A DNA stretch of 64,000 nucleotides from Macrostomum lignano (taxonomy: Eukaryota): NCBI GenBank assembly GCA_002269645.1, contig NIVC01003743.1, positions 1 to 64,000 of the forward strand, written 5' to 3'. Both the position numbers and the translations under genes were made by a program. Under the pieces are notes generated by a model. The model had not been told where the DNA came from, did not search any database, and worked only from the letters and a program-made list of their open reading frames with translations. This document shows, piece after piece, positions 131-57,737 of the stretch. The stretch's first letter is position 1. Every line of letters begins with the position of its first letter.

Positions 131-1116
131 AGGGTGTCCAAAAAGTAGTGATACTTTTAACCATAGCTCCATTCTATAGCTGCCTGTGATTTAAAATTTT
201 ATGAACTGATAAACTTCTCTTCTACAGACTGCTTTTTGAATTTTTAAAATTGATACCAGAGAATAAAAGTTATACCCACGAAAGTAACAGTATATGTACC
301 ATAGAGTTACATAAACTATATCAAAATTTATAATAGTCAACTTCTGCACTCATTCATTAAGAAGGCATCGATAAATGTCTTGTTTAAGCAATACCAAGGC
401 CCAATTGCAAAATGATGCTCCCTGTGACTGACTGAAATTTGTCTATGGAAAGAATCATGTGCAGAAATATAAAGCATTAAATTCATTACTTTACTTGCAA
501 ACAGAGGAGCTTGCATTTTGCGATTTGTTCATGAGTTCATTGCCCATACTTGACAACAACACATGGATGTGCATTCAGTTGTTGCTCAGCAAAGTACCCA
601 TCTTCACTCTTTGGGTCGCTGGCCATCGTGCCTCAGAAATTCACGCAAACTTTGCTCTGCGCACGGATTCTCTGTGGTCAGCAAAATGACAGTTTATCGA
701 TGGATGAAGCAGTTCAGCGAGGGAAGGACTGACTTGGCAGGTCAGCATCGGACGGGGCGGCCATACGTTCATCGACTTGATGTACTGGCGGACTCCATTC
801 TGGATCTTCTTGACAAGGACTCCCAAATGACCATTGAGAGAGATTGCTGACAGGTTGGACAAACCGAAATCAACAATTCATCAAAGCTTACTCGGCATGG
901 ATCTCGTGAAGCTCAGCCTATAATTTGTGTAACTATTCGGTACAGGTACTGTTACTTTCGTGGGTATAACTTTTGTTCTCTGGTATCAATTTTAAAAGTT
1001 CAAAAAGCAGTCTGTAGAAGAGATTTTCCGCTATCAGTTCATAAAATTTTAAATCACAGGAAGCTATAGAACAAGAGCTACGGTTAAAAGTATCACTACT
1101 TTTTGGACACCCCTCG
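131..1116 (+). mobile_element. Internally deleted mariner-type element with long (~170-190 bp) TIRs and a residual transposase N-terminal HTH fragment
   Basis: 131-~320 (AGGGTGTCCAAAAAGTAGTGATACTTTTAACC...) is the imperfect reverse complement of ~919-1116 (...GGTTAAAAGTATCACTACTTTTTGGACACCCCTCG). TA flanks both ends. ORF 563-850 has VYRWMKQFSEGRTDLAGQHRTGRP, the mariner W..RF..GR...D..RSGRP pattern. No DDD domain. Confidence 0.85.
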
Positions 1117-4444: not shown

Positions 4445-7400
4445 ATGTGGAATCCAAGTGCTGTACCAGCAGCAGCCACATTTGGCAGCACAGCTGGGGT
4501 GTCGGCTCAACAGTCCCCAGGCCAAGCTGCTGCAGCTTCTATTGCAGTTTCTACTCCATCATTTTCTCACTATGCAGCTCTGGCTGCGGCCTATAGCAGC
4601 GCCGCCGCCGCTGTTCCCGTTGTACCAGCGCCAGTTCAAGCGCCGAAACGACCGTCTGATTTGAAAAATGTCAACACTTCAACTATGTGCCGATTTAATC
4701 TTGGCAATGGTGCGCCGACTGGGGTAAGCGCAGGGGCTGGCTTATTTATAAGTCTAGTATACATTGTTTAGCTGCCCTGTGAACAAGTTGTTAAGCTGGC
4801 GCACCTGGTGTTGGCGCCCTTTTGTGCTGGCGCCCCTTGGTGCTGGCGCCTCTTGGTGCTGGCGCCTCTTGGTGCTGGCGCCCCTTGGTGCTGGCGCCCC
4901 TTGGTGCTGGCGCCCCTTGGTGCTGGCGCCCCTTGGTGCTGGCGCCCCTTGGTGCTGGCGCCCCTTGGTGCTGGCGCCCCTTGGTGCTGGCGCCCCTTGG
5001 TGCTGGCGCCCCTTGGTGCTGGCGCCCCTTGGTGCTGGCGCCCCTTGGTGCTGGCGCCCCTTTGGTGCTGGCGCCCCTTGGTGCTGGCGCCCCTTGGTGC
5101 TGGCGCCCCTTGGTGCTGGCGCCCCTTGGTGCTGGCGCCCCTTTGGTGCTGGCGCCCCTTGGTGCTGGCGCCCCTTGGTGCTGGCGCCCCTTGGTGCTGG
5201 CGCCCCTTGGTGCTGGCGCCCCTTGGTGCTGGCGCCCCTTGGTGCTGGCGCCCCTTGGTGCTGGCGCCCCTTGGTGCTGGCGCCCCTTGGTGCTGGCGCC
5301 CCTTGGTGCTGGCGCCCCTTGGTGCACAAATAACCGCGCCGCATTTAATAATGGCTACCATAATTTCATAACTTAGAAAATTTTTTACTTCAAAATTATT
5401 GATTTCATTTTTTAATAATACTGAACGTACGAGTAACTACGACTGTATTGTTAAATCAAAATGCCTCGCCATCTAATTAGTAGTGCGCAACTTCGTTCAA
5501 ATTAATCAGGTGCCGCCACCTCAGCAGCCTCCTGCGCTGCCTCAGACGGCACCAACCGCCGCAGGCGCTCCCCAGCCGCTGCCCGAGGCCCATAGCAACG
5601 CCGGCGATGATGACGAGTCGGCATTCGAAGCCGAATTCGATCGAATAATGGAGGCGAAGCGCCAGGCTGAGGAAGCCAATCTCGATCCCGATGAACGGGC
5701 GGCCCTTCGGGAACTGGAGGCCGTGAAGAAGCAGAGACGCTTTGCCAATCATGCTGACTCTACCGAGGCTGATGCTGCTAGGGAGTTCGATCGTTTTCAG
5801 GTACAGATTGTAGTAACAGCAAGTCACAGGTGTACATGCCTGAGGGTTAGAAAGTCAGGACCCCTGTACACCCTCTGTGAGCGTCTGTATGAGTGCGTGA
5901 CTGCGTACAGTATTGGCGCGCTTGTCACTGTGCTCAGCAGTCAGCGGAATGGGCAGAATTGCCTCAAGCGCTGGCTGTGCGGGAGGATGTCTCCGAAAGC
6001 GTTGCACCCGCGATAGTTTATGGGCTATTAACTAAGTGAGTCGAGTCAACCCTCAACTCCAAGAGTCGTTCTGTTTGCGCTTAACTTTCTTTATCCCAAG
6101 TAGACTAAAGACTAAATAGAGTTGTTATAAATGCGAAATGGGATTGTATTTGGTAAGATTACACTGATGCCCTTTAGGCGCAGCACAGTGATTTCTAAAG
6201 CGACTCTAGCACGCCTCAGATACAACTCTGCGGCTCCAGAACCATTTGCGTCGCCCCAGAGCCACTAGACTCGCAAGAGTCACCCCAAAGTCACTAGAGT
6301 CACCACAGAGTCACTAGAGTCACCACAGAGTCACTAGAGTCACTACAGAGTCACTAGAGTCACCACAGAGTCACAAGAGTCACCACAGAGTCACTAGAGT
6401 CACCACAGAGTCACTAGAGTCACCACAGAGTCACGACAGAGTCACTAGAGTCACTGAGTCACCACAGAGTCACTAGAGTCACCACAGAGTCACTAGAGTC
6501 ACCACAGAGTCACTAGAGTCACCACAGAGTCACTAGAGTCACCACAGAATCACTAGAGTCACCACAGAGTCACTAGAGTCACTAGAGTCACCACAGAGTC
6601 ACGACAGAGTCACTAGAGTCACTAGAGTCACCACAGAGTCACCACAGAGTCACTAGAGTCACCACAGAGTCACTAGAGTCACCACAGAGTCACCACAGAG
6701 TCACCACAGAGTCACTAGAGTCACCACAGAGTCACTAGAGTCACCACAGAGTCACTAGAGTCACCACAGAGTCACCACAGAGTCACTAGAGTCACCACAG
6801 AATCACTAGAGTCACCACAGAATCACTAGAGTCACCACAGACTCACCACAGAGTCACTAGAGTCACCACAGAGTCACCACAGAGTCACTAGAGTCACCAC
6901 AGAGTCACTAGAGTCACTAGAGTCACCACAGAGTCACTAGAGTCACCACAGAGTCACTAAAGTCACCACAGAGTCACCACAGAGTCACCACAGAGTCACT
7001 AGAGTCACTAGAGTCACCACAGAGTCACTAGAGTCACTAGAGTCACCACAGAGTCACTAGAGTCGCCACAGAGTCATTAGAGTCACCACAGAGTCACTAG
7101 AGTCACCACAGAGTCACTAGAGTTACCACAGAGTCACTAGAGTTACCACAGAGTCACTAGAGTCACCACAGAGTCACTAGAGTCGCCACAGAGTCACTAG
7201 AGTCACCACAGAGTCACTAGAGTCACCACAGAGTCACTAGAATCACCACAGAGTCACTAGAGTCACCACAGAGTCACTAGAGTCACCACAGAGTCACTAG
7301 AGTCACCACAGAATCACTAGAGTCACCACAGAGTCACTAGAGTCACTAGAGTCACCACAGAGTCACTAGAGTCACTAGAGTCACCACAGAGTCACTAGAG

Positions 7401-10400
7401 TCACCACAGAGTCACTAGAGTCACCACAGAGTCACTAGAGTCACCACAGAGTCACTAGAGTCACCACAGAGTCACTAGAGTCACCACAGAGTTACCACAT
7501 AGTCATTAGAGTCACCACAGAGTCACTAAAGTCACCACAGAGTTACCACAGAGTCATTAGAGTCACCACAGAGTCACTAAAGTCACCACAGAGTCACTAG
7601 AGTTACCACAGAGTCACTAGAGTCACCACAGAGTCACTAGAGTCACTAGAGTCACCACAGAGTCACTAGAGTTACCACAGAGTCACCAGAGTCACCACAG
7701 AGTCACTAGAGTCACCACAGAGTCACTAGAGTCACTAGAGTCACCACAGAGTCACTAGAGTCACTAGAGTCACCACAGAGTCACTAGAGTCACTAGAGTC
7801 ACCACAGAGTCACTAGAGTCACCACAGAGTCACCACAGAGTCACTAGAGTCACCACAGAGTCACTAGAGTCACCACAGAATCACTAGAGTCACCACAGAA
7901 TCACTAGTGTCACCACAGAGTCACTAGAGTCACCACAGAGTCACAAGAGTCACCGCAGAGTCATTAGAGTCACCACAGAGTCACTAGAGTTACCACAGAG
8001 TCACTAGAGTTACCACAGAGTCACTAGAGTCACCACAGAGTCACTAGAGTCGCCACAGAGTCACTAGAGTTACCACAGAGTCACTAGAGTCACCACAGAG
8101 TCACTAAAGTCACCACAGAGTCACTAGAGTTACCACAGAGTCACTAGAGTCACCGCAGAGTCACAGAGTCACTAGAGTCACTAGAGTCACCACAGAGTCA
8201 CTAGAGTCACCACAGAGTCACCACAGTGTCACCACAGAGCCAGTAGAGTCACAAGAGAGTCACTAGAGTCATCACAGAGTCACCAGAGTCACCACAGAGT
8301 CACTAGAGTCGCCACAGGGGTTACTAAAGTCACCACAGCGTCACTAGAGTCACCACAGCGTCACTAGAGTCACCACAGAGTCACCAGAGTCACCACAGAG
8401 TCACTAGAGTCACCACTGGGGTTACTAAAGTCACCACAGCGTCACTAGAGTCACCACAGAGTCACTAGAGGCACCACATAGTCACTAGAGTCACCACAGA
8501 GTCACTAGAGTCACCACAGAGTCACTAGAGTCACCACAGAGTCACTAGAGTCACCACAGAGTCACTAGAGTCACCACATAGTCACTAGAGTCACCACAGA
8601 GTCACTAGAGTCACCACAGAGTCACTAGAGTCACCACAGAGTCACTAGAGTCACCACAGAGTCACTAGAGTCACCACATAGTCACTAGAGTCACCACAGA
8701 GGTTACTAAAGTCACCACAGCGTCACTAGAGTCGTTTCAAAGTCTCAGACAATAAAAGGCCTCTAATTGACTCTGAGGTGACTGTTTGACTTTTTTGGCG
8801 ACTTGTACCGTGACATCTCGTCGTTTTTAAGTTGTCTAGAGTCACTTCTTTCATATTGTATCATAATTTTACCCTGCGTTGTCTGATACGCTTCTTGGCC
8901 TTGTTACCGTTTTCATCGGGCCAGTCTCCAGGCCAACTTTCGAGCTTAAGCCCCAAATTTTTGTTTTGGCCGTGCACGGCATCTCTTCGTTCTAATGAGT
9001 GAAGAAGTCACCAGAAGAAGTCAGCGATATTGCTTAATATTGTAGCAGTAATCGTGTTATACTTCTGGTAGATTATATGAAAAAAAAATTATTTAGCGGC
9101 TCAATTTGTTAAACAGTTGGCATATTCCCTTAGCTGACTGATTCCTTTGAACGCTACATTGCTCATTACTACTTATGAATAGTAGTAGGTTTTATCTAGC
9201 ATATGTACCGGTATATGGAATCTTGATGCTGCGAAGACTCCACGAGAGACTAACTGACAATAGGATGAAATAGTGAATTACAATAATATTCAAGATGGTT
9301 GTTGACTAGTGGTCAGAGCGTCGGACTCACGATTTGAATGTCGGGGGTTCGATTCCCGATCACACTGGAACAATTCGTGTCCTTGAGCAGGACACTTAAC
9401 TCTGCATTGCTTCAGTTCACCCAGCTGTAAAATGGGTGCCAGCATTAGCTGGGGTAATTGAGGACTGAACAGCCGTAGGCATGTACACTCTGTGCCTTGC
9501 GCCTTGGGGTTGGCCCTCATGGCTGTGAATCGCATGACAACCCCAGAGAATGTGGCCAGGGGGTTGTGGCCCTGCCCCGCCCCAATTATCTAAAAGGGTT
9601 ACCCAACACCCTGCCATTCCCTCCAGACCAGTAGTGCATCGGATTCCACCGGAGACGGTAGCGAACTGGCCAAGCAGGCAGCGGAATGGCGCACCTACAT
9701 GTCCTACGCGCTGCAGTACAATCCGCAGGAAGCTGAACGCCTGTTCGCCATGTACCCGCACTTGCGCGACCTGCTGGCTACTCCCGACGATGCTTTCAAG
9801 CAGCAGCAGACTGCGCTGGCAGTGGAGCAGACCAAACAGCCCATGGCTCCTAATTTAAACGTGACAAGCTACGAAATTCAGCAGCAGCAGCAGCAGCCGA
9901 TGCAGCCTCCAATTCAGCCACAGCAGCAACTGCAGCAGCAGCAGCATCTGCCCACTTTGCCAACCATGGCCGAGGCTGAATCTCGTCGCAAAGCTCAAGA
10001 AGCTGCCGAGCAAGCACTAATCGAACTGGCCGCTATGCAGGAGCAACAGCAGGAGCAGCAAAAGCAACAGCAGCAACAATTAGAACAGCAACAGCAGAAG
10101 CAATTAAAACAGCAACAGCAGAAACAATTGTTGAAGCAGCAGCAAAAGCAGCAACGCGAACAGCAGGCGCAGTTAAAGGCGTCTAGCAAGAAATCGTCCG
10201 GATTTCACGATGTTTCCCAGCCTCCTCCACAGCCGCCGCCGCATCAGCAGCAGCAGAAGCAGCACCCGCCTAGGCCTTGGGCTGACACTGACGAGCGCAA
10301 GGGTCGCCAGCAGCAGCCTGCAGCTCCGGCCTATAAAAAGTCGCGCTTTGACTCTCCGCAACCGTGGCAACAGCAGCAGCAGCAGAAACTGCCTCCTAAT

Positions 10401-11767
10401 TTTCAACAACAACAGTATCAGCATCCGCCGCCTCATCATAGTAAGCCGCAGCATCATCCCTCTAGTGTTAAGCGACAGAATCAGCAGCGCAGCGGCGTTG
10501 TCATCAATTTTGGCCAGGTAATTGGAACTGGATTTTTGGTTAGATTGCATTAAATGGATTGCTAATCTATAGCCATATCTGCTGGGTGAAGGAACAGAAT
10601 GGATTGCTAATCTATAGCCATATCTGCTGGGTGAAGGAACAGAATGGATTGCTAATCTGTAGCCATATCTGCTGGGTGAAGGAACAGAATGGATTGCTAA
10701 TCTGTAGCCATATCTGCTGGGTGAAGGAACAGAATGGATTGCTAATCTATAGCCATATCTGCTGGGTGAAGGAACAGAATGGATTGCTAATCTATAGCCA
10801 TATCTGCTGGGTGAAGGAACAGAATGGATTGCTAATCTATAGCCATATCTGCTGGGTGAAGGAACAGAATGGATTGCTAATCTATAGCCATATCTGCTGG
10901 GTGAAGGAACAGAATGGATTGCTAATCTATAGCCATATCTGCTGGATGAAGGAACAGAATGGATTGCTAATCTATAGCCCATATCTGCTGGGTGAAGGAA
11001 CAGAATGGATTGCTAATCTGTAGCCATATCTGCTGGATGAAGGAACAGAATGGATTGCTAATCTATAGCCATATCTGCTGGGTGAAGGAACAGAATGGAT
11101 TGCTAATCTATAGCCATCTCTGCTGGGTGAAGGAACAGAATGGATTGCTAATCTATAGCCATATCTGCTGGGTGAAGGAACAGAATGGATTGCTAATCTA
11201 TAGCCATATCTGCTGGGTGAAGGAACAGAATGGATTGCTAATCTATAGCCATATCTGCTGGGTGAAGGAACAGAATGGATTGCTAATCTATAGCCATATC
11301 TGCTGGGTGAAGGAACAGAATGGATTGCTAATCTATAGCCATATCTGCTGGGTGAAGGAACAGAATGGATTGCTAATCTATAGCCATAGCTGCTGGGTGA
11401 AGGAACAGAATGGATTGCTAATCTATAGCCATAGCTGCTGGATGAAGGAACAGAATGGATTGCTAATCTATTCCTCATACCAAAGCATCCTTAAACCTCC
11501 CTCCCCCAACCGGGCCAGAGACCTGCCGAGTCCAGCAATCTGGTGCCAGTTCAGGACGCCTCCGTCAGGCAGGCGTTCGCTGCCGCAGCTGACGAGGGAG
11601 ACGAAGCCGAGGAAGGCGAAGTGTCCGAGGAGGTGCCCGAGCTGGTGCGCATTCGAATGCGCAATGTCGGCAAGTACACGCCGACCTCGGAGGGCCCGAG
11701 GTCCTACGGCAAGACCCGTGCGGGCTTCTGTGACGACAGGCGACGGCCCAAATACGAAAGATTTTGA
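4445..11767 (+). CDS. PCNP-domain (PEST proteolytic signal-containing nuclear protein family) protein with long A/P/Q-rich N-terminal region, ~569 aa, 4 exons
   Basis: Exons 4445-4723, 5510-5800, 9627-10517 and 11519-11767 join in phase 0 through GT-AG sites. C-terminus SVRQAF...EEVPELVRIRMRNVGKYTPTSEGPRSYGKTRAGFCD matches the PCNP signature ([42 protein letters not shown], recalled). Confidence 0.75.
4795..5325. repeat. 16-bp minisatellite (GGTGCTGGCGCCCCTT)n, intron 1 of the PCNP-like gene
   Basis: About 33 near-identical units with degenerate edge units. Confidence 0.95.
5431..5489 (+). other. Degenerate 28S rRNA fragment (R2/I-PpoI target region), copy 1
   Basis: 5431-5480 matches the recalled LSU consensus GAGTAACTATGACTCTCTTAAGGTAGCCAAATGCCTCGTCATCTAATTAG at 39/50 ungapped. 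Mismatches cluster in the AAGGTAGC core. Confidence 0.8.
5830..6010 (+). mobile_element. 3' half of a family 2 SINE
   Basis: GTGTACATGCCTGAGGGTTAGAAAGTCAGG...GGAATGGGCAGAATTGCCTCA aligns to the reverse complement of 21180-21310 and to 2700-2830. Confidence 0.7.
6255..8732. repeat. 20-bp minisatellite built from 9-mer AGAGTCACT and 11-mer AGAGTCACCAC, intron 2
   Basis: About 2.5 kb array with visible 20-bp periodicity. Confidence 0.95.
9294..9477 (+). mobile_element. tRNA-derived SINE with CORE-like central domain (family 1), 3' truncated
   Basis: tRNA-like head with box B GGTTCGATTCC, then GTGTCCTTGAGCAGGACACTTAACTCTGCATTGCTTCAGTTCACCCAGCTGTAAAATGGG, which resembles the CORE-SINE domain. 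Second copy at 49174-49368 (-). Confidence 0.8.
9478..9575 (-). mobile_element. 5' part of a family 2 SINE
   Basis: GGCATGTACACTCT..CCTTGGGGGTTGGCCCTCATG..GTGAAT aligns to 21299-21360 and to the reverse complement of 2660-2715. Confidence 0.7.
10554..11470. repeat. 45-bp minisatellite, intron 3 of the PCNP-like gene
   Basis: Unit AATGGATTGCTAATCTATAGCCATATCTGCTGGGTGAAGGAACAG, about 20 copies. Confidence 0.95.
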
Positions 11768-17681: not shown

Positions 17682-18335
17682 GGCAGTGCTTATTTAGCCG
17701 GCACCGGTCAAATAAGCGCGTCACTATTTAGCCGGCAGTCCTGCCCCATTGCCGGTCAAATAAGCGCGTCACTATTTATCTGGCAGGCCTGCCCAACTGC
17801 CGGTCAAATAAGCCCGTCACTATTTAGCCGGCAGTCCTGCCCCACTGCCGGTCAAATAAGCCCGTCACTATTTAGCCGGCAGTCCTGCCCCAGTCCTGCT
17901 GCCGGTCAAATAAGCCCGTCACTATTTAGCCGGCAGTCCTGCCCCACTGCCGGTCAAATTAATAAGCTATAACCCATTCATCCAAGCGATCCTTGCCCTC
18001 TCGTGTGCTACAGACAGTATACATGTACAGTATGGCCAGGGCCCACAACTAGGACGTATTAAACATTCGCCGACACTTATTCAGACACTTCTACAGACAC
18101 TTTAGTTTCTGTCGTACGAATCGTAGGAACAAGCATTAAATTTGTTTATTGCCGGCTAAATAGTGACGAGCTTATTTGACCGGCAGTGGGGCAGGACTGC
18201 CGGCTAAATAGTGATGGGCTTATTTGACCAGCAGTGGGGCAGGACTGCCGGCTAAATAGTGACGGGCTTATTTGACCGGTGCCGGCTAAATAGTAGCGAA
18301 CTTATTCGACCGGTGCCGGCTAAATAAGCACTGCC
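17682..18335. mobile_element. MULE/Foldback-type non-autonomous element with internally repetitive arms
   Basis: TIR GGCAGTGCTTATTTAGCCGGCACCGGTC / GACCGGTGCCGGCTAAATAAGCACTGCC. Perfect 9-bp TSD TAAAAGAAT (17673-17681, 18336-18344). Arms made of ~50-bp repeats in inverted orientation. Confidence 0.9.
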
Positions 18336-19307
18336 TAAAAGAATAGCAATGCTAGAAGATTAATAGCTCTCCCTCAATACCAAGGTATCCATGCATTTTG
18401 GTGCTCTAGATTGCTTTTTGGTATTTCAGTTTAAAACACCAAAATAATATTAAAAAGAAATTCTATAAGTATAACAAATATATAAATACTTTACAAAATG
18501 TTCAATATTCATAATAAAAGCAGTAGGCCTATTCATTTCGTTAAACTGGCATGTTTCTTAAATTTATAAAAATCCATTCAATTTAATTGCATGCATTTGC
18601 TTGCTGTATCTTAATATACAATATAAGCTAGCTGCTAGTGCTATGAAGACTTAGTTAGGTAAAGTTAAAATTTATCAGCTGAGATATGGCTAGCAATATT
18701 ACAGTAGGCCTCAATTGAATCAAGAAATCAAGAGTCTGGTCAGAGAAAAAAAATTAAATCAAAATAAAATAAAACCATTTTTAAATTAAAAAAAACATTA
18801 AGTCAGCTTAACAAAATGAATAGTAGGGCCTACCTTAGTTTTTTTACAGTAAGTGAGTAAATGAGCTAAATTAAGACTGAATTTCTATATTTTTGTGTAT
18901 AATTCTTATCTCTACATATAAAAATCAAAACTCTGTGTGTGTGTCTATGTACAAATTACTTCGCTATAGACTCCCATACTGCTCAACCAAATTACACCAA
19001 ACTTTACACCCACCCTAAAATTACTACGGAGAATGTCTTAGGCTACCTTTAAATTTCCTAGACTCAAGTCTTCCTATCTAAAAGTATAAAAAGCTGCTCA
19101 AAATGTGTGGTTTTTTCACTAAATCCTCCATAGTACCACTCCACATCTACCAATCCTCTTCAAATTTGACACAGACAATCCTCAACTATTTTGGCACAAT
19201 CATGTAAAATTTAGAGTCTCAAAGTTAATCTTGAATGGTGCTATGCACTTTTAAAGTTAGGCTGTTTTTTTCAGTGTAGCAACTACCCCAACCTCTGCCT
19301 GCCTGCC

Positions 19308-19602
19308 CATACATGCGCAACCTCCGAAATTCAGTCGGCCATGCGACTTAGTTTTAACAAAAATGCGACATAGTTTTTGGCCAAAATGCGACTTAGATGT
19401 AAAAAAACCCTAGAGCAAAATTAACGCAACTTTGGGTAAACGGCAGGAGTAACTATGACTGTCTTATTAAACCAAAATGCCTCGTCAGCTACTTAGTACT
19501 ACTACTTTGTTATTTTTTGGGTGGGCATTTTGCGACTTCCTTGGTTGGCCGCCAAATTGGTGGGCCAAATCGGCCGACTCGGCCGACTGTTGCGCATGTA
19601 TG
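19308..19602. mobile_element. 295-bp hAT-type MITE carrying a 28S rRNA fragment
   Basis: Perfect 14-bp TIR CATACATGCGCAAC / GTTGCGCATGTATG. Perfect 8-bp TSD TGCCTGCC (19300-19307, 19603-19610). Subterminal ATGCGAC(T/A)TAG repeats. Confidence 0.92.
19434..19497 (+). other. Degenerate 28S rRNA fragment (R2/I-PpoI target region), copy 2
   Basis: 54/64 ungapped identity to the recalled GGGTAAACGGCGGGAGTAACTATGACTCTCTTAAGGTAGCCAAATGCCTCGTCATCTAATTAGT. Six of the ten mismatches fall in positions 34-41. Confidence 0.9.
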
Positions 19603-21169
19603 TGCCTGCCTCTCTTTCCCGATCCCAATCTGGGCCCAGATATGTAAAAGAGTTTCAAAATTGACTAACTTTCAGCTGCCATAAATTTGCTCCACGTGAA
19701 GCGATTGACTTCAAACTTGACACAATTCTTCATTGACTCATTCTTTATCTAAATGTAGAGTTTCAACTCTGTAACTCAACCAAAAAAGAAACTGTAAGCA
19801 TTTGAAGTTTGTCTGCTTTTTCTGTTGTTTGTGCCACTCACTCACTCATTCTCCCAGAGCCAGACCAAGGGTCAAGCAATAAGGCTGAATGTACATGGCA
19901 ATGTATAGTGTTTTGGAATAGCTTTGTTTATGGCTTTCTCTACACCCTGTGGAGAGGCTATGTTTAGTCATCTATAACAGTTTAGTGAGTAGCATTGTCC
20001 TCTGTATAGGCTCTGTATACATTAGAAAATTTTTATATTCATTTTGTTTTCGTAACTGATATGCATTGCGTACAGTCAATAAATTATAATATAATTGTTG
20101 TTTTACTTTGCACTTTTTAGAACATCATTTTAAAATGATTATTCTTGCATTTATTCTTATTGTACCTTAATGATAAAAAAATGATAAAGTAAAAATTCTA
20201 GTTCAATAAATCATAGAAATAAATAAATGCTTCATGTTTATTTTTTCATAGACCAATGTATAATACTATTTTATTTGTTAGTCTATGGCATTTTGATTGA
20301 CTTGAAGTACTTGTTCAAATAAATGACAAAAGTTTTCATTTTTATACCTTATAATATCTTATGAATAGGAGCAGCTTTTAAAAAATAAATTATATTTTCT
20401 AATGTTAACATTTAATATGTTTAAGATTACATTTAACTTTAGCATAGTTTATAACAATTTACAATCAAAGTTGGTTAATTTTTGCATTGATAGCAAAATT
20501 TTAACACTTTATAAAACTTGTATTAGCTTCTACTATTCCCTATGAGAAGGTATATATACTAGTAATATTATACTTTCTAAAGGCATTCAAAGTATTTTTT
20601 AACTGTTTAAACTGTTTATTATCTATCATAAATATGCATAAATGCTTGGCATTCTTCAATATATTTTAATGGAAAAATATACCTTTAGAATATAGAAAAC
20701 TTTTAGCTAATATTCATAAAATATTAGTAATAAAAATATAATATTTACTCTTTTTCATGCCTTTAAATATTGTTTTACCAAATGTACCTTAACACTGCAA
20801 AGCTATAATAATGTCTTTATCAAAACAAAAAATGAAAATAATTTAGATGTATTAAAGTAATGATCCTAAAATGAATTGCTTAGCAACTATACAATATTAT
20901 TCTATTACAAAGCATTTTAAAAACTTTTTTCAGATAGCTTAAATGTTGCAAAGTTTTTCTCAATACATTAGTATAATACTTTTGTTTAGTTAGAAAATTG
21001 ATTGGTTTTATCCAAAAGACAAACCAGTAATGATGATGACTCACTAATTCCTATATTCAAAAGAATAATTACGAGTCATATACTATCATAATTACTAAAA
21101 TTATGGAATGCCCCACACAGTTGCTGCATTAGTGCCACAATATATACATGCCAAAATCTTACTAATATT

Positions 21170-35703: not shown

Positions 35704-37657
35704 ATGTCGTCAAGCGAGCGCAGCAAGCTGTCAAAATTCTGCCAGCCCGGCAGGCCGTATGTCCGCATCTGCGCACCGATGGTTCGCTACTCCAAGCTTC
35801 CGTTTCGCTATCTGATGCGTCAGTACGGCTGCGACCTGTGCTACACGCCTATGATCGTCGCTTCGTCCTTTCTGTGCTCCGACAAGGCCAGGGACAACGA
35901 ATTCGTCACTGGGCCGGGCGACCGGCCTCTCATAGTGCAGTTCGCTTCTAACGATCCGGCAGAGTTCGCCGCCTGCGTCCAGTTGGTCGAGCCGCACTGC
36001 GACGGCGTGGATTTGAATTGCGGCTGTCCGCAACGCTGGGCCAATCAGCAGAATCTTGGCGTTTGTTTGTGCTCACAGCCGCAACTGTTAGCAGAGATGC
36101 TCACGGCTGCCAGGGCGGCGCTGCGATGTCCTAATAAGTTTGCGCTATCCGCAAAAATTCGATTGTGTCCGGATATGCGCGACACGGAGCGGCTGTGCTT
36201 GGTGAGCATGCCATACATGCGCAACCTTGGGGATCACTGGCCGTTTCTATTGGCAACACACATATGTAAGTCGCTATTGGCTGAGAGCAGTCACGTGACT
36301 ACTATTCTGTCCAATAGCGACTTACATGTGTGTGCTGTGTGTGTCGCCAATATAAACAGCCGGGTGAATCCCTAGATTGCGCCCAAGCATGTTGGTGAGG
36401 GGAGAGCAGTATAAAATTAGCCCAATGTACATTCTAAACCCAGAATGTAGATTGCCAGTTTGCTAAAAAATAGCCGCCCAAACCCAGAATGTAGATTGCC
36501 AGTTTGCTAAAAAATAGCCGCCCAAATCCAGAATGTACATTGACAGTGTGCTAAAAATAGACGCTTAAATCCAGAATGTACATTGCCAGTGTGCTAAAAA
36601 AATGCCCACATCCAGAATGTGCATTGCCAGTGTGTTAAAAATAGACGCCCAAATTTAGAATGTACATTGCCAGTGTGTTAAAAATAGACGCCCAAAATCT
36701 AGAATGTACATTGCCAGTGTGCTAAAAATAGATGCCTTAACCCAGAATGTACATTGCCAGTGACCCAAAAATAGACGCCTAAACCCAGAATGTAGATTGC
36801 ACAGTTTGCTAAAAATAGCCGCCCAAATCCAGAATGTACATTGCCAGTGTTCTAAAAATAGACGCTTAAACCCAGAATGTACATTGCCAGTGTTCTAAAA
36901 ACGCCTAAACCCAGAATGTAGATTGCCAGTTTGCTAAAAATAGCTGCCCAAATCCAGAATGTACATTGCCAGTGTTCTAAAAATAGACGCCTAAACCCAG
37001 AATTGATGATGTGCTAAAAATAGCCACCCAAATCCAGAATGTACATTGCCAGTGTGCTAGAAATAGATGCCTAAACCCAAAATTTACATTGCCAGTGTGC
37101 TAAAAATAGACGCCCAAATTCAGAATGTACATTGTCTGTGAGATAAGTAAAAATAGCTTTTGCCGCTCTTACCCACTCAGACCCTCGAAAAGGCCGGAGC
37201 AGATTGGATAACTGTGCACTGTCGCACTCCAACCCAGCGTCACGAGCCGGCAGACTGGGAAGCTTTAGCCCGACTACGCTCTGTTTTGCCGACCCGCATA
37301 GCTCTGGTTGCCAATGGCGACGTGTTTAATCTATTGGACGCGGACAGATTACATTCTCTTACTGGCTGTTTAGGCGTCATGTCCGCCAGAGGCCTAATAC
37401 GCAATCCGGCCATGTTCTCGCCAGAGAGGCCGTTGACAACGCCTAACGAGTGCGTTCGACGATTTTTATGGCTGAGCTTGAGTCTGGGCCTACCCTATCC
37501 GGTGTTTCACTATCACCTGGTGCACATGCTCGAGGATCGATTGAGTCGGGCTGAGGCGCATTTCTTCAATTATTTGACCAGCGTAGCCGCTGTTATTGAC
37601 TTTGTCAATCGGTGGGTTCTGAATGCTCATAATGGGGATTGTGGCAATGATGATTGA
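35704..37657 (+). CDS. DUS4L: tRNA-dihydrouridine(20a/20b) synthase, DUS4-like, 2 exons (upstream in-frame ATG at 35662 possible)
   Basis: Exons 35704-36201 and 37181-37657, phase 0. ICAPMVRYSKLPFR, DLCYTPM, PLIVQF, GVDLNCGCPQRWA, WITVHCRT, VANGDV, GVMSARGLIRNPAMF. Confidence 0.95.
36435..37135. repeat. ~43-bp minisatellite, DUS4L intron
   Basis: Unit CCAGAATGTACATTGCCAGTGTGCTAAAAATAGACGCCTAAAC, moderately diverged. Confidence 0.9.
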
Positions 37658-39634: not shown

Positions 39635-46182
<6,548 letters not shown>

Positions 46183-47929: not shown

Positions 47930-49030
47930 GAAATTCCGCCGTGTCATCGAGGAGGCGCGCATCCGCCAGTCTACGCTGATCATTTGTCTTCGTTGACTTT
48001 CGAAAGGCGTTTGCTTGACTCGGTGTTGAGAGCCGCGCTTCTTTTGTCCTTCGAGCCTACCGGGTCCGCAGCAGCTGTCATGTCGCTGTTCTGCAGGGCG
48101 ACACACTAGCGCCGTTCCTCTTCGTGCTGCTGCTGCTGCATGGACTGGATGCTTTGGACCGCACTCCCCTCGGCTGATGACGGCTTCCTGCTGCGCAGAC
48201 GCATCAGTCGCCGCCACTGCAAAAAGCGCCTGAGCGTGCTTGGCTACGCCGACGATCTCGCCCTCCTGTTCTCGGCCGTTGAAGGCGCCCAGCGCCAGAT
48301 CGACAATAGGTTGGTTGAGGTGGCATCGAGCGTCGGTCTGGTTGTCAACACACTGAAGACCGAGGAGCTGACTGTGCCAGCCGACATCCCAGCGGACCTG
48401 ACGTGCCGCGGCGCAGAGGGGCAGACGGCCAAGCTCGTACGCTGCCAGTGGTTCACCTTACCACGGCGGTCTGGTGCCCACGTGAAGGAAGACCTCCGGC
48501 GGCGCAGAGGACTTGCCTGGGCGGCCTTCCGTTCAATCCGAGCCGTCCTCCAGTCCGAAGCGCTGCCTGACCGCCAGAGGGCTCGGCTGTGGCAGGCGGT
48601 GGTCGAAACCATCCTGCATACAACGCAGAGACGTGGACGTTGACGGCTACGCTGGAGCATCTAGCAGCTGCATGGACTCGACGCACTCAGGGCTGCAGCT
48701 GACGAGAGCGTCAGGACCGAGGCCCTGTACGATCGAGCCAAGCTGTAGCGCCCGTCCGTCATTCTTCGATGATGGCGCTAACGACTTCAACTGGCGGGTT
48801 ACATGTACTGTACGTGATCCGGGCCCCGGCCTAGCCCCCGAACCTGTTCAGGACGTCTTGCTGCTCACACCTTGCAGGGCCCGTTTCAGGCGGGGTCAGG
48901 CCCGAACCTGTCGATACGTGGACTGCCTGCTATGCGACGCTAGGGCACCCGACACTGCCAACGTGGCGAACTTCGTCCGCTCTCAGGCTCTGCCATCTGA
49001 CGCGCCCTGCTCTAACTGTGACTTACATGC
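47930..49030 (+). mobile_element. 5'-truncated, frameshifted non-LTR retrotransposon RT fragment, probably RTE clade
   Basis: Across frames: RRVIEEARIRQSTLII..FVDFRKAF, QGDTLAPFLF, VLGYADDLALL, VGLVVNTLKTE, RRRRGLAWAAF, AVVETIL. Several frameshifts and an internal deletion before QGD. Confidence 0.9.
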
Positions 49031-55418: not shown

Positions 55419-55499
55419 TTGCTTGATTAATTTTTTATTAAACTATTGATGCGTTAACTGAATTATCAGTTGATTAACTGATGTGTTGATTGACTTATA

Positions 55500-56940
55500 T
55501 GTTGATTAATTTATCAGTTGATTGATTGATGAGTTGATTGATTGATGAGTTGATTGATTGATGAGTTGATTGATTGATGAGTTGATTGATTGATGAGTTG
55601 ATTGATTGGTGAGTTTATTGATTGATGAGTTTATTGATTGATGAGTTGATTGATTGATGAGTTGATTGATTGATGAGTTGATTGATTGATGAGTTGATTG
55701 ATTGATGAGTTGATTGATTGATGAGTTGATTGATTGATCAGTTGATTGATTGATGAGTTGATTGATTGATGAGTTGATTGATTGATGAGTTGATTGATTG
55801 ATCAGTTGATTGATTGATGAGTTGATTGATTGATGAGTTGATTGATTGATCAGTTGATTGATTGATCAGTTGATTGATTGATCAGTTGATTGATTGATCA
55901 GTTGATTGATTGATGAGTTGATTGATTGATCAGTTGATTGATTGATCAGTTGATTGATTGATCAGTTGATTGATTGATGAGTTGATTGATTGATCAGTTG
56001 ATTGATTGATCAGTTGATTGATTGATCAGTTGATTGATTGATCAGTTGATTGATTGATGAGTTAATTGATTGATCAGTTGATTGATCGATCAGTTGATTG
56101 ATTGATCAGTTGATTGATTGATGAGTTGATTGATTGATCAGTTGATTGATTGATCAGTTGATTGATTGATCAGTTGATTGATTGATCAGTTGATTGATTG
56201 ATCAGTTGATTGATTGATGAGTTGATTGATTGATCAGTTGATTGATTGATCAGTTGATTGATTGATGAGTTGATTGATTGATCAGTTGATTGATTGATCA
56301 GTTGATTGATTGATGAGTTGATTGATTGATGAGTTGATTGATTGATCAGTTGATTGATTGATCAGTTGATTGATTGATCAGTTGATTGATTGATCAGTTG
56401 ATTGATTGATCAGTTGATTGATTGATGAGTTGATTGATTGATGAGTTGATTGATTGATCAGTTGATTGATTGATTGAGTTGATTTGAATGATTGATTGAT
56501 GAGTTGATTGATTGATGAGTTGATTGATTGATGAGTTTATCGTTGATTGATCAGTTGATTAATTAATCAGCTGATTGATTGATGAGTTGATGATTGATCA
56601 GTTGATTGATTGATCAGTTGATTGATTGATGAGTTGATTGATTGATCAGTTGATTGATTGATCAGTTGATTGATTGATGAGTTGATTGATTGATCAGTTG
56701 ATTGATTGATGAGTTGATTGATTAATGAGTTGACTGATTGATCAGTTAATTGATCGATCAGTTGATTGATTGATGTGTTGATTGATTGAGGGTTTGATTG
56801 ATTGATGAGTTGACTGATTGATGTGTTGATTGATCGATCAGTTGATTGATTGATTGATGTGTTGATTGATTGATGTGTTGATTGATTTTTGAGTTGATTG
56901 ATTGATGTGTTGATTGATGGATATGCTGATTGATTGATTT
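55500..56940. repeat. 16-bp GTTGATTGATTGAT(G/C)A array downstream of arrestin
   Basis: Direct reading. Confidence 0.95.
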
Positions 56941-57226: not shown

Positions 57227-57290
57227 GCGAGTAAACTTCTGGAGAAACTATTACACAGATGCCTCGTCAGCTAATTAGTTACGCCTGAAT
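57227..57290 (+). other. Degenerate 28S rRNA fragment with the 13-nt target core deleted, copy 3
   Basis: 22/28 to GCGGGTAAACGGCGGGAGTAACTATGAC, then directly 26/30 to CCAAATGCCTCGTCATCTAATTAGTGACGC. TCTCTTAAGGTAG is absent. Confidence 0.8.
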
Positions 57291-57737
57291 AGCCGTAATT
57301 CTTGGGGAATTTGTCTAAAAATCTGTAGTTGATTTAACCTGACTTTATATCTCTGCAGATCTTCCAGCTTGTATTGCAAAGCTGTCTTTACAAGCGATCT
57401 ATAAATTTAAAGTTGTCAATTTATTCTGCGCTAAAATTGCTTCTATAGTGGATTTTTAATAGTAGCAATTTCGAAAATCGTATGCCTCGCTTCTACATAA
57501 ATTTTATCCTTTAAAATCTGTTCTGGCCGTCTCTGTCGATTGGTAAATGTCAGAATAGATAAATTGTGCCATGCCCTGTAAGTAATACTATGCTACTGTA
57601 AGTAGCGCTGGTATATTACCAATCGGGTAATTCTTTGTCTCATTCAACTTTTTAATTGATATTAGTATTTTTTGTTGTAGTTATTTAATTTTCGTTCTTT
57701 TGTACCTACTATGTGGCGCAAATTATGCTTAATATTT

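What the first reader, a model, noticed from the sequence alone, without database searches (positions are those of the whole stretch)
57227..57290. Third 28S fragment has a clean 13-nt deletion of the endonuclease target core
Seen: both flanks of the LSU segment are present, but TCTCTTAAGGTAG is missing. It shares the GTCAGCTA variant with copy 2. Known: the missing bases are almost the whole I-PpoI site and span the R2 nick and insertion point. Inference: a second, independent way of losing the same core, as expected if intact ectopic targets are cut and repaired or selected against.
Basis: partly seen in the sequence, partly recalled or inferred. Interest (0 to 1): 0.72.

Follow-up and report, generated by a model that had tools for sequence, protein, structure and literature searches.

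The report
Decayed 28S fragment with core deletion
A short, decaying copy of ribosomal RNA gene sequence sits between ordinary genes and lacks 13 bases at the spot where R2 jumping genes normally cut. It belongs to a small family of such copies, one of which rides inside a DNA transposon, and nothing shows that the loss was caused by cutting rather than by ordinary decay.

Summary
Window 57227-57292 (+) matches the 28S/LSU segment around the R2/I-PpoI site, 22/28 upstream and 32/38 downstream, with a 13-nt gap over the core. It shares GTCAGCTA with copy 2. Which 13 nt are missing is ambiguous: TCTCTTAAGGTAG and GACTCTCTTAAGG fit equally, and the second ends exactly at the R2 nick.

There are three such modules, here called c1 (5431-5489), c2 (19434-19497) and c3 (the finding). 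They are the only LSU-like pieces in the window. None has RNA structure, coding potential or 28S homology beyond about 80 nt.

Two results change the reading. First, c1 and c2 share six identical derived core substitutions and a non-28S right junction, so their altered core was inherited, not lost twice. Second, c2 lies inside a 295-bp transposon-like element (19308-19602) with perfect 14-nt terminal inverted repeats and a perfect 8-bp target-site duplication. The lesion-bearing module is therefore transposon cargo.

c3 has no such ends and extends beyond the c1/c2 insert, so its deletion is a separate event. Two lesions covering the nick have a positional chance of about 0.05-0.08. The shared T>G is uninformative (P=0.35).

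Best reading: a neutral relic of a dispersed 28S-derived repeat. Endonuclease-driven loss remains possible but unproven.

The parts
57227..57254 (+). c3 upstream flank, homologous to 28S positions about -39 to -14 (or -11) relative to the R2 nick
   Evidence: 22/28 matches to GCGGGTAAACGGCGGGAGTAACTATGAC, P=1.6e-7; alignment
57251..57255 (.). c3 deletion junction. 13 nt of the 28S core are absent. The breakpoint lies either after 57251 (missing GACTCTCTTAAGG, ending at the R2 nick) or after 57254 (missing TCTCTTAAGGTAG)
   Evidence: both placements cost 3 mismatches
57255..57292 (+). c3 downstream flank, homologous to 28S +1/+4 to +43. Contains the GTCAGCTA variant and a second 2-nt gap
   Evidence: 32/38 matches; BLASTN E=1.8e-4 to 3e-4
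19434..19497 (+). c2 28S-like module. The core is replaced (GACTGTCTTATTAAACCAAAATGCC) without a change in length
   Evidence: 63/80, E=3e-14; LSU_rRNA_eukarya model positions 2216-2310, 15.6 bits
19308..19602 (.). 295-bp non-autonomous DNA-transposon-like element (MITE) carrying c2. It has 14-nt perfect terminal inverted repeats CATACATGCGCAAC (19308-19321 / 19589-19602) and three subterminal ATGCGACWTAG repeats
19300..19307 (.). Left copy of the 8-bp target-site duplication TGCCTGCC
   Evidence: Direct reading
19603..19610 (.). Right copy of the 8-bp target-site duplication TGCCTGCC
   Evidence: Direct reading
5431..5497 (+). c1 28S-like module (28S homology 5431-5489) plus 8 nt of non-28S junction shared with c2. 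It lies in an intron, 12-20 nt upstream of the acceptor of the exon starting at 5510
   Evidence: 45/59, E=1e-7 to 28S; 86.5% identical to c2 over 52 nt; splice context
36211..36227 (+). Terminus of a sister element (CCATACATGCGCAACCT, identical to the left end of the c2 element), with no 28S module

Best explanation
c3 is a non-functional, neutrally decaying solo copy of a small dispersed repeat that originated from about 75-80 bp of the 28S rRNA gene centred on the R2/I-PpoI site.

Shown here:
- There are three copies in 64 kb. All are on the + strand and all cover the same 28S interval. None has 28S homology beyond that interval.
- One copy (c2) is the central cargo of a 295-bp DNA-transposon derivative bounded by inverted ends and a target duplication. 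This gives a concrete way for the fragment to be copied around the genome.
- c1 carries the same altered core and the same right junction as c2, so it descends from the same lesion-bearing template.

Inferred:
- The fragment was captured once, or at most twice, from rDNA. Filler or template-switch capture during gap repair of a cut-and-paste element is one route.
- It was then spread by transposition and by short patch copying.
- It has since decayed with an AT bias.
- In c3 the 13-bp gap is one of two small deletions picked up during that decay.
For: - The three modules stand far above background: scores 31, 44 and 32.75 against a maximum of 19.25 in shuffles and 14 elsewhere in the window.
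- About 4.7 kb of genuine LSU probe sequence hits the window only at these three sites.
- There is no 28S homology outside the modules on either side.
- c1 and c2 are 86.5% identical to each other, closer than either is to 28S. They share 6 identical derived substitutions (P=6e-5).
- The c2 element has perfect 14-nt inverted ends and a perfect 8-bp duplication, and a sister terminus lies at 36211. The perfect ends contrast with cargo that is about 15% diverged, so the lesion predates this insertion.
- There is no RNA structure (z between -0.3 and +1.8), no Rfam family at gathering score, no tRNA head and no ORF of note.
- c3 is about 19% diverged with two small gaps, as expected for old neutral DNA.
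- Transposons that carry rDNA-derived pieces are a known phenomenon (PMC10946416).
Against: - c1 and c3 have no inverted ends or target duplications, and their flanks show no similarity to the arms of the c2 element. Transposon carriage is therefore demonstrated for one copy only.
- c3 extends beyond the c1/c2 insert on both sides. A single capture thus requires a longer ancestor that was later trimmed.
- Both lesion events cover the R2 nick (joint positional P about 0.05-0.08). All copies are roughly symmetric about that nick. Neutral decay explains neither point by itself.
- The host's own 28S sequence and the genome-wide copy number are unknown.
Confidence: 0.55

Rival explanations
1. Endonuclease-driven erosion. 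An R2-type element recognises the intact flanks of ectopic or donor copies and nicks the bottom strand at AAGG^TAGCC. It cuts the top strand a variable distance upstream. The break is rejoined without cDNA, deleting the bases between the two cuts. That gives 13 bp in c3 and a small duplication-plus-deletion scar in the c1/c2 ancestor.
For: - One of the two equally good alignments of c3 puts the deletion exactly upstream of the published bottom-strand nick.
- R2 junctions with upstream 28S deletions are documented and attributed to top-strand cuts outside the preferred site (PMC2718515).
- Ectopic target copies can be used by R elements: a 22-bp R1 target in the D. ananassae IGS carries R1 insertions.
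- The 7 shared c1/c2 differences fall within 14 nt spanning the nick (P=5e-4 for the clustering).
- All modules are centred on the nick.
Against: - Given that each lesion is a single event, the positional coincidence is only about 0.2 x 0.26-0.39.
- The alignment of c3 is ambiguous.
- There is no R2 reverse transcriptase or endonuclease ORF, no R2 junction and no half-module in the window.
- The c1/c2 lesion was inherited through copying, so at most two events exist.
- The expected product of R2 at an intact target is an insertion, not a deletion.
Confidence: 0.2
2. The core was never there. The modules derive from an rDNA unit already occupied or scarred by an insertion at this site, or from the 28S-like 3' UTR of an R2 family joined to downstream 28S. 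The centre is then a junction rather than a deletion.
For: - Seven R2 families carry 28S-like sequence in their 3' UTR directly abutting downstream 28S (PMC5035012).
- In c3 the downstream part can start exactly at TAG(C).
- R1 copies outside rDNA carry 7-28 bp of 28S with them.
Against: - There is no element sequence at the centre (0 nt in c3, about 5 nt in c1/c2).
- c1 and c2 lack the TAG that target-primed insertion would leave intact.
- The upstream and downstream flanks are about equally diverged. The model predicts a diverged upstream flank and a conserved downstream flank.
- No 3' tail or target duplication is present.
Confidence: 0.1
3. A functional element. The two flanks are kept by selection, for example as a decoy or binding site for a factor or guide RNA that recognises this 28S region, while the centre is free to vary.
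For: - Mismatches are concentrated in the centre while the flanks of c2 are 91-94% identical to 28S.
- A SNORA74/U19-like H/ACA snoRNA whose pocket fits the H69 loop lies in the same gene as c1.
- All three copies are in the sense orientation of the neighbouring genes.
Against: - The three contexts are unrelated: an intron, the interior of a transposon, and intergenic DNA.
- H69 pairing is broken in c2, and no structure signal is seen on either strand.
- The c3 flanks are about 19% diverged with AT-biased changes.
- Complementarity to the snoRNA is automatic for anything copied from 28S.
Confidence: 0.05

Closest known systems
Orphan rDNA fragments / rDNA-derived pseudogene pieces scattered outside the rDNA array
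   Same: A short piece of rRNA gene sequence lying among protein-coding genes. It is decaying, with no rRNA function and no flanking rDNA.
   Different: All three pieces cover the same ~80-nt interval, and two share derived changes. They form a copied family rather than random debris.
Transposable elements carrying rDNA-derived sequence (Pokey/mPok with IGS repeats, SINE28 from the 28S 3' end, 5S-headed SINEs and Cassandra; review PMC10946416)
   Same: At c2 a 28S-derived segment is internal cargo of a non-autonomous element with inverted ends and a target duplication.
   Different: The segment is the R2/I-PpoI target region of 28S. It is not a promoter-bearing 5S, an IGS repeat or the 28S 3' end, and no such case is listed in the review's table. 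No benefit to the element is evident. Only one of the three copies is demonstrably inside an element.
28S flanks co-mobilised by R1/R2 retrotransposons, and ectopic R-element target copies (Stage & Eickbush 2009, PMC2718515)
   Same: Short 28S stretches next to the insertion site end up outside 28S genes. Target-site deletions upstream of the nick are known.
   Different: Those fragments lie on one side of the site and remain attached to an R element. Here both sides are present and no R element is attached.
Fish R2 families with a 28S-like 3' UTR (Kojima et al. 2016, PMC5035012)
   Same: They give the appearance of a continuous 28S sequence that is altered around the canonical insertion site.
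   Different: In the fish families the 28S-like part is 110-130 bp of upstream sequence inside a full R2 within rDNA. Here there is no R2 body and no rDNA context.

Membership tests
Functional nuclear LSU (28S) rRNA gene | Match to the LSU_rRNA_eukarya model at gathering score, extending over the gene | tested here: not met
   No Rfam hit at gathering score. c2 scores only 15.6 bits against a cutoff of 50, and c3 has no LSU hit. No homology beyond about 80 nt.
Functional nuclear LSU (28S) rRNA gene | Intact universal core CTCTTAAGGTAGCC and H69 pairing | tested here: not met
   The core is deleted in c3 and substituted in c1 and c2.
rDNA-derived pseudogene fragment | Statistically significant similarity to rRNA gene sequence | tested here: met
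rDNA-derived pseudogene fragment | Located outside an rDNA unit, with no function-preserving constraint | tested here: met
   The modules are flanked by protein-coding genes. c3 is about 19% diverged with indels, and no structure signal is present. Constraint at orthologous loci could not be tested.
Non-autonomous cut-and-paste DNA transposon (MITE; 8-bp duplication as in hAT or P superfamilies) | Terminal inverted repeats | tested here: met
   Met for c2 only: 14/14 perfect inverted ends, extending to about 22 nt across an indel. Not met for c1 and c3.
Non-autonomous cut-and-paste DNA transposon (MITE; 8-bp duplication as in hAT or P superfamilies) | Target-site duplication flanking the ends | tested here: met
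   Met for c2 only: TGCCTGCC at 19300-19307 and 19603-19610. None at c1 or c3.
Non-autonomous cut-and-paste DNA transposon (MITE; 8-bp duplication as in hAT or P superfamilies) | Multiple copies, and an autonomous partner encoding a transposase that would assign the superfamily | tested here: inconclusive
   One sister terminus lies at 36211-36227. No transposase is present in the window, and the genome-wide copy number cannot be reached with these tools.
R2 insertion or R2 footprint | R2 sequence (reverse transcriptase or restriction-like endonuclease ORF, or 3' UTR) joined to TAGCC | tested here: not met
   No R2-like ORF or junction is present. The centre of c3 holds 0 extra nt.
R2 insertion or R2 footprint | Lesion boundary exactly at the bottom-strand nick AAGG^TAGCC | tested here: inconclusive
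   One of two equally scoring alignments of c3 ends at the nick.
SINE / retroposed rRNA fragment (e.g. SINE28) | Poly(A) or LINE-type tail, target-site duplication, pol III head | tested here: not met
   No tail and no duplication longer than 6 nt. No tRNA-like head. SINE28 derives from the 28S 3' end, not from this region.
Structured small RNA gene | Stable fold, or a covariance-model match | tested here: not met
   z-scores from -0.3 to +1.8 on both strands; no family match.

The most novel reading that the evidence does not exclude
Ectopic copies of the R2 landing site, spread through the genome by a DNA transposon, are disarmed at the cleavage point by R2 endonuclease cutting followed by error-prone rejoining. 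The central lesions would then be a fossil record of R2 nuclease activity outside the rDNA. They would also record a three-way interaction between rDNA, a cut-and-paste element and a site-specific retrotransposon.
Probability: 0.15. Interest if true: 0.6.

Novelty: new member of a known kind. Interest (0 to 1): 0.27.

Why it matters
As it stands this is ordinary: an rDNA-derived relic, one more example of transposons picking up and scattering rDNA pieces.

It would matter if a genome-wide census showed that copies of the R2 target are damaged specifically at the nick. That would be direct genomic evidence that a strictly site-specific retrotransposon nuclease acts on off-rDNA targets. It is relevant to how target specificity is policed in nature, and to the current use of R2 proteins for targeted gene insertion. 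The transposon-borne copy also shows how an R2 landing site could be seeded outside the rDNA.

Tried and rejected
1. Longer 28S pseudogene. Local alignments of 250 nt on each side of each module against about 110 nt of adjacent 28S were no better than shuffles.
2. General scatter of rDNA debris. 4.7 kb of genuine LSU sequence hits only the three modules.
3. Small RNA gene, snoRNA or target mimic. There is no fold signal on either strand, no Rfam match and H69 pairing is broken.
4. SINE or retroposed fragment. No tail, target duplication or tRNA head.
5. c1 and c3 as further copies of the c2 element. There is no similarity to its arms or to the sister element. A gapped 11-nt inverted repeat I saw by eye around c1 (about 4779-4790 / 5490-5501) was not returned by the repeat finder, so I treated it as chance.
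6. Relatives elsewhere.
   - The derived-core pattern has no match in metagenome contigs.
   - The GTCAGCTA pattern found only two genuine divergent LSU genes.
   - The c1 host gene has no protein relatives.
   - The AMPK-like exon has none above 84% identity, so no orthologous loci or genome copies of this species could be fetched.
7. Literature. No paper holds the variant sequence. None was found describing a MITE that carries this 28S region.
8. I ran no further search on pinning down the taxon, because it would not change the verdict.

Full report
**What is at the coordinates**

Window 57227-57292 (+) reads GCGAGTAAACTTCTGGAGAAACTATTAC|ACAGATGCCTCGTCAGCTAATTAGTTACGCCTGAATAG.

I used the 28S segment around the R2 site as reference.
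- against a published 84-nt R2 target duplex (bioRxiv 10.1101/2024.11.11.623112);
- against a published 60-mer whose cleaved bottom-strand halves place the nick at top-strand AAGG^TAGCC (PMC13000458);
- against the Rfam LSU consensus printed.

Against this reference:
- The upstream flank matches 22/28 (P=1.6e-7 at a fixed offset).
- The downstream flank matches 32/38, with one extra 2-nt gap.
- BLASTN of the downstream flank alone gives E=1.8e-4 to 3e-4.
- A gapped local alignment of the whole module scores 32.75. The best unrelated place in the real window scores 14, and the maximum over 60 block-shuffled windows is 19.25.
- The alignment contains one 13-nt gap over the core.

The missing 13 nt cannot be named uniquely. 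All placements remove TCTCTTAAGG.

**The family**

A pattern search and BLAST find exactly three such modules, all on the + strand:
- c1 at 5431-5489: 45/59 to 28S, E=1e-7.
- c2 at 19434-19497: 63/80, E=3e-14. It is also recognised weakly by the LSU covariance model at positions 2216-2310.
- c3, the finding.

Further properties:
- About 4.7 kb of genuine LSU sequence, fetched incidentally from metagenomes (L001, L002), hits the window only at these three places. This is not a general scatter of rDNA debris.
- None of the modules continues into neighbouring 28S sequence on either side.
- All cover the same interval, roughly symmetric about the nick: c3 about -39 to +43, and the c1/c2 insert about -35 to +36.
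- None folds better than shuffled sequence on either strand.
- No Rfam family, tRNA-like head or meaningful ORF is present.

The surrounding DNA is an animal-type gene region. It has a kinase (AMPK-alpha-like), a zf-UBP/UCH protease, a dihydrouridine synthase and an arrestin-domain gene, all on the + strand. It is unusually rich in minisatellites. c3 lies about 1.8 kb downstream of the last arrestin-domain exon, between two arrays.

**c1 and c2 are not independent**

Over 52 nt they are 86.5% identical to each other, more than either is to 28S. In the 51 shared columns:
- Seven positions differ from 28S in both copies, six of them identically, where 0.65 identical parallel changes are expected (P=6e-5).
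- All seven lie within 14 nt spanning the nick (P=5e-4 for such clustering).

The core reads GACTGTMTTRTTAAAYCAAAATGCC against GACTCTCTTAAGGTAGCCAAATGCC. The length is unchanged, which is compatible with a small duplication plus a small deletion. The two copies also share 7/8 nt of non-28S sequence (ACTTYGTT) immediately after the point where 28S homology ends. Their altered core was therefore inherited from one template.

**c2 is transposon cargo**

c2 sits in the middle of a 295-bp element, 19308-19602, with these features:
- perfect 14-nt terminal inverted repeats (CATACATGCGCAAC), extendable to about 22 nt across a 10-nt indel;
- three subterminal ATGCGACWTAG repeats;
- a perfect 8-bp direct duplication of the flanking DNA (TGCCTGCC at 19300-19307 and 19603-19610).

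The same 17-nt terminus occurs once more, at 36211-36227 in the intron of the dihydrouridine-synthase gene, without a 28S module.

This is the anatomy of a non-autonomous cut-and-paste DNA transposon. An 8-bp duplication fits the hAT or P superfamilies, but no transposase is available to assign it. The ends and duplication are perfect while the cargo is about 15% diverged from 28S and 13.5% from c1. The lesion therefore predates this insertion and travelled with the element.

**Where c3 fits**

- c3 has no inverted ends and no duplication longer than 6 nt. It shows no similarity to the arms of the c2 element or its sister.
- It retains 28S homology beyond both boundaries of the c1/c2 insert (3/4 on the left and 6/8 on the right; P=1.7e-3). 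It is not a descendant of that insert. Either it is a separate capture, or all three descend from a slightly longer ancestor.
- The GTCAGCTA variant shared with c2 is the only identical derived state in 54 shared columns, where 0.43 are expected (P=0.35).
- That variant falls at a position that is lower-case in the Rfam consensus and is G in two genuine LSU genes. It may even be the host's own 28S state. It says nothing about relationship.

**How strong is the case for targeted loss of the core?**

There are at most two lesion events.
- A single 13-nt deletion placed at random in the 82-nt alignment spans or abuts the nick with probability 0.20.
- A single 14-nt complex lesion contains the nick with probability 0.26-0.39.
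- The joint probability is about 0.05-0.08, on a hypothesis framed after seeing the data.

c3 is about 19% diverged from 28S with AT-biased changes and two small gaps. That is what an old neutral fragment looks like.

On the other side:
- One valid alignment puts the c3 deletion exactly upstream of the nick.
- The literature documents R2 junctions with upstream 28S deletions, attributed to variable top-strand cleavage.
- It also documents R elements using an ectopic copy of their target (PMC2718515).
- The window contains no R2 sequence, no junction and no half-module.

**Verdict**

The best-supported reading (about 0.55) is that c3 is a neutral relic of a small dispersed repeat. That repeat derives from the 28S R2-site region and has been copied at least partly as cargo of a DNA transposon. 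The 13-bp gap is ordinary decay.

Rivals:
- Endonuclease-driven erosion, about 0.2.
- Origin from an already occupied or scarred site, or from an R2 3' UTR with 28S-like sequence (PMC5035012), about 0.1.
- A selected element, about 0.05.

The remainder is unassigned.

Transposons carrying rDNA pieces are known: Pokey, SINE28 and the 5S-headed elements (PMC10946416). I found no description of one carrying this particular 28S segment. I therefore file it as a new member of a known kind, of modest interest.

**Limits**

No DNA of this species or a close relative could be reached:
- There were no protein relatives for the c1 host gene.
- The best AMPK hit was 84% identical.
- The metagenome scans are exhausted.

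Genome-wide copy number, the host's own 28S, its R2 content and conservation at orthologous loci all remain untested. These are exactly the data that would decide between decay and erosion.

Noticed in passing
window 9010-9117 (+): SNORA74/U19-like H/ACA snoRNA hairpin (40.5 bits, E=7.8e-7, below the gathering score), which folds with z=-3.15. Its pseudouridylation pocket (AAGUCA / GUGUUAUA) fits the 28S H69 loop GUAAC-UA-UGACU, the same stretch that is copied in the three modules. It lies in the intron after the one that holds c1. The link is probably coincidental.
   Followed up: partly
window 19308-19602, with flanks 19300-19307 and 19603-19610: A complete 295-bp MITE-like element with perfect 14-nt inverted ends, subterminal ATGCGACWTAG repeats and a perfect 8-bp target duplication TGCCTGCC. 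It carries the c2 28S-like module as its central segment.
   Followed up: yes
window 36211-36337 and 36436-37134: A sister terminus of the same element family sits right after a splice donor of the Dus-domain gene. It is followed by a near-perfect 84-nt hairpin (a weak 'mir-3149' Rfam hit) and a 43-bp minisatellite. No right end was found.
   Followed up: partly
whole window: About a third of the 64 kb is minisatellite or microsatellite arrays (35 TRF rows, periods 4-134 bp), mostly within introns of + strand genes. Examples are a 1.6-kb TCTG array right after the kinase exon (40507-42110) and a 1.5-kb GATT-type array just upstream of c3 (55445-56938).
   Followed up: no
window 17704-17959 and 18150-18279: Two arrays of the same 48-bp unit in opposite orientation (reverse-complement consensus units). 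This is a foldback-like structure about 1.2 kb upstream of the c2 element.
   Followed up: no
window 4445-10553 (+): A glutamine-rich multi-exon gene with no detectable protein relatives in the 5.8-billion-protein search and no Pfam domain. It hosts c1 (intron 1), a 2.4-kb 9-20-bp array and the snoRNA-like hairpin (intron 2).
   Followed up: partly
window 48140-48643 (+) and 563-850 (+): An ORF with a YADD motif that looks by eye like a LINE reverse-transcriptase remnant (no Pfam hit), and a weak Mos1-type HTH fragment (E=8.6e-4, below the cutoff). Both look like old transposon debris, and neither is R2-like.
   Followed up: partly
L001 (1199 nt) and L002 (3537 nt), metagenome contigs: Genuine but divergent eukaryotic LSU genes that carry G at the GTCAKCTA position. 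L001 also has a diverged core (GACGCCCATAAGTTAGCGAAATG) within otherwise continuous LSU sequence.
   Followed up: partly
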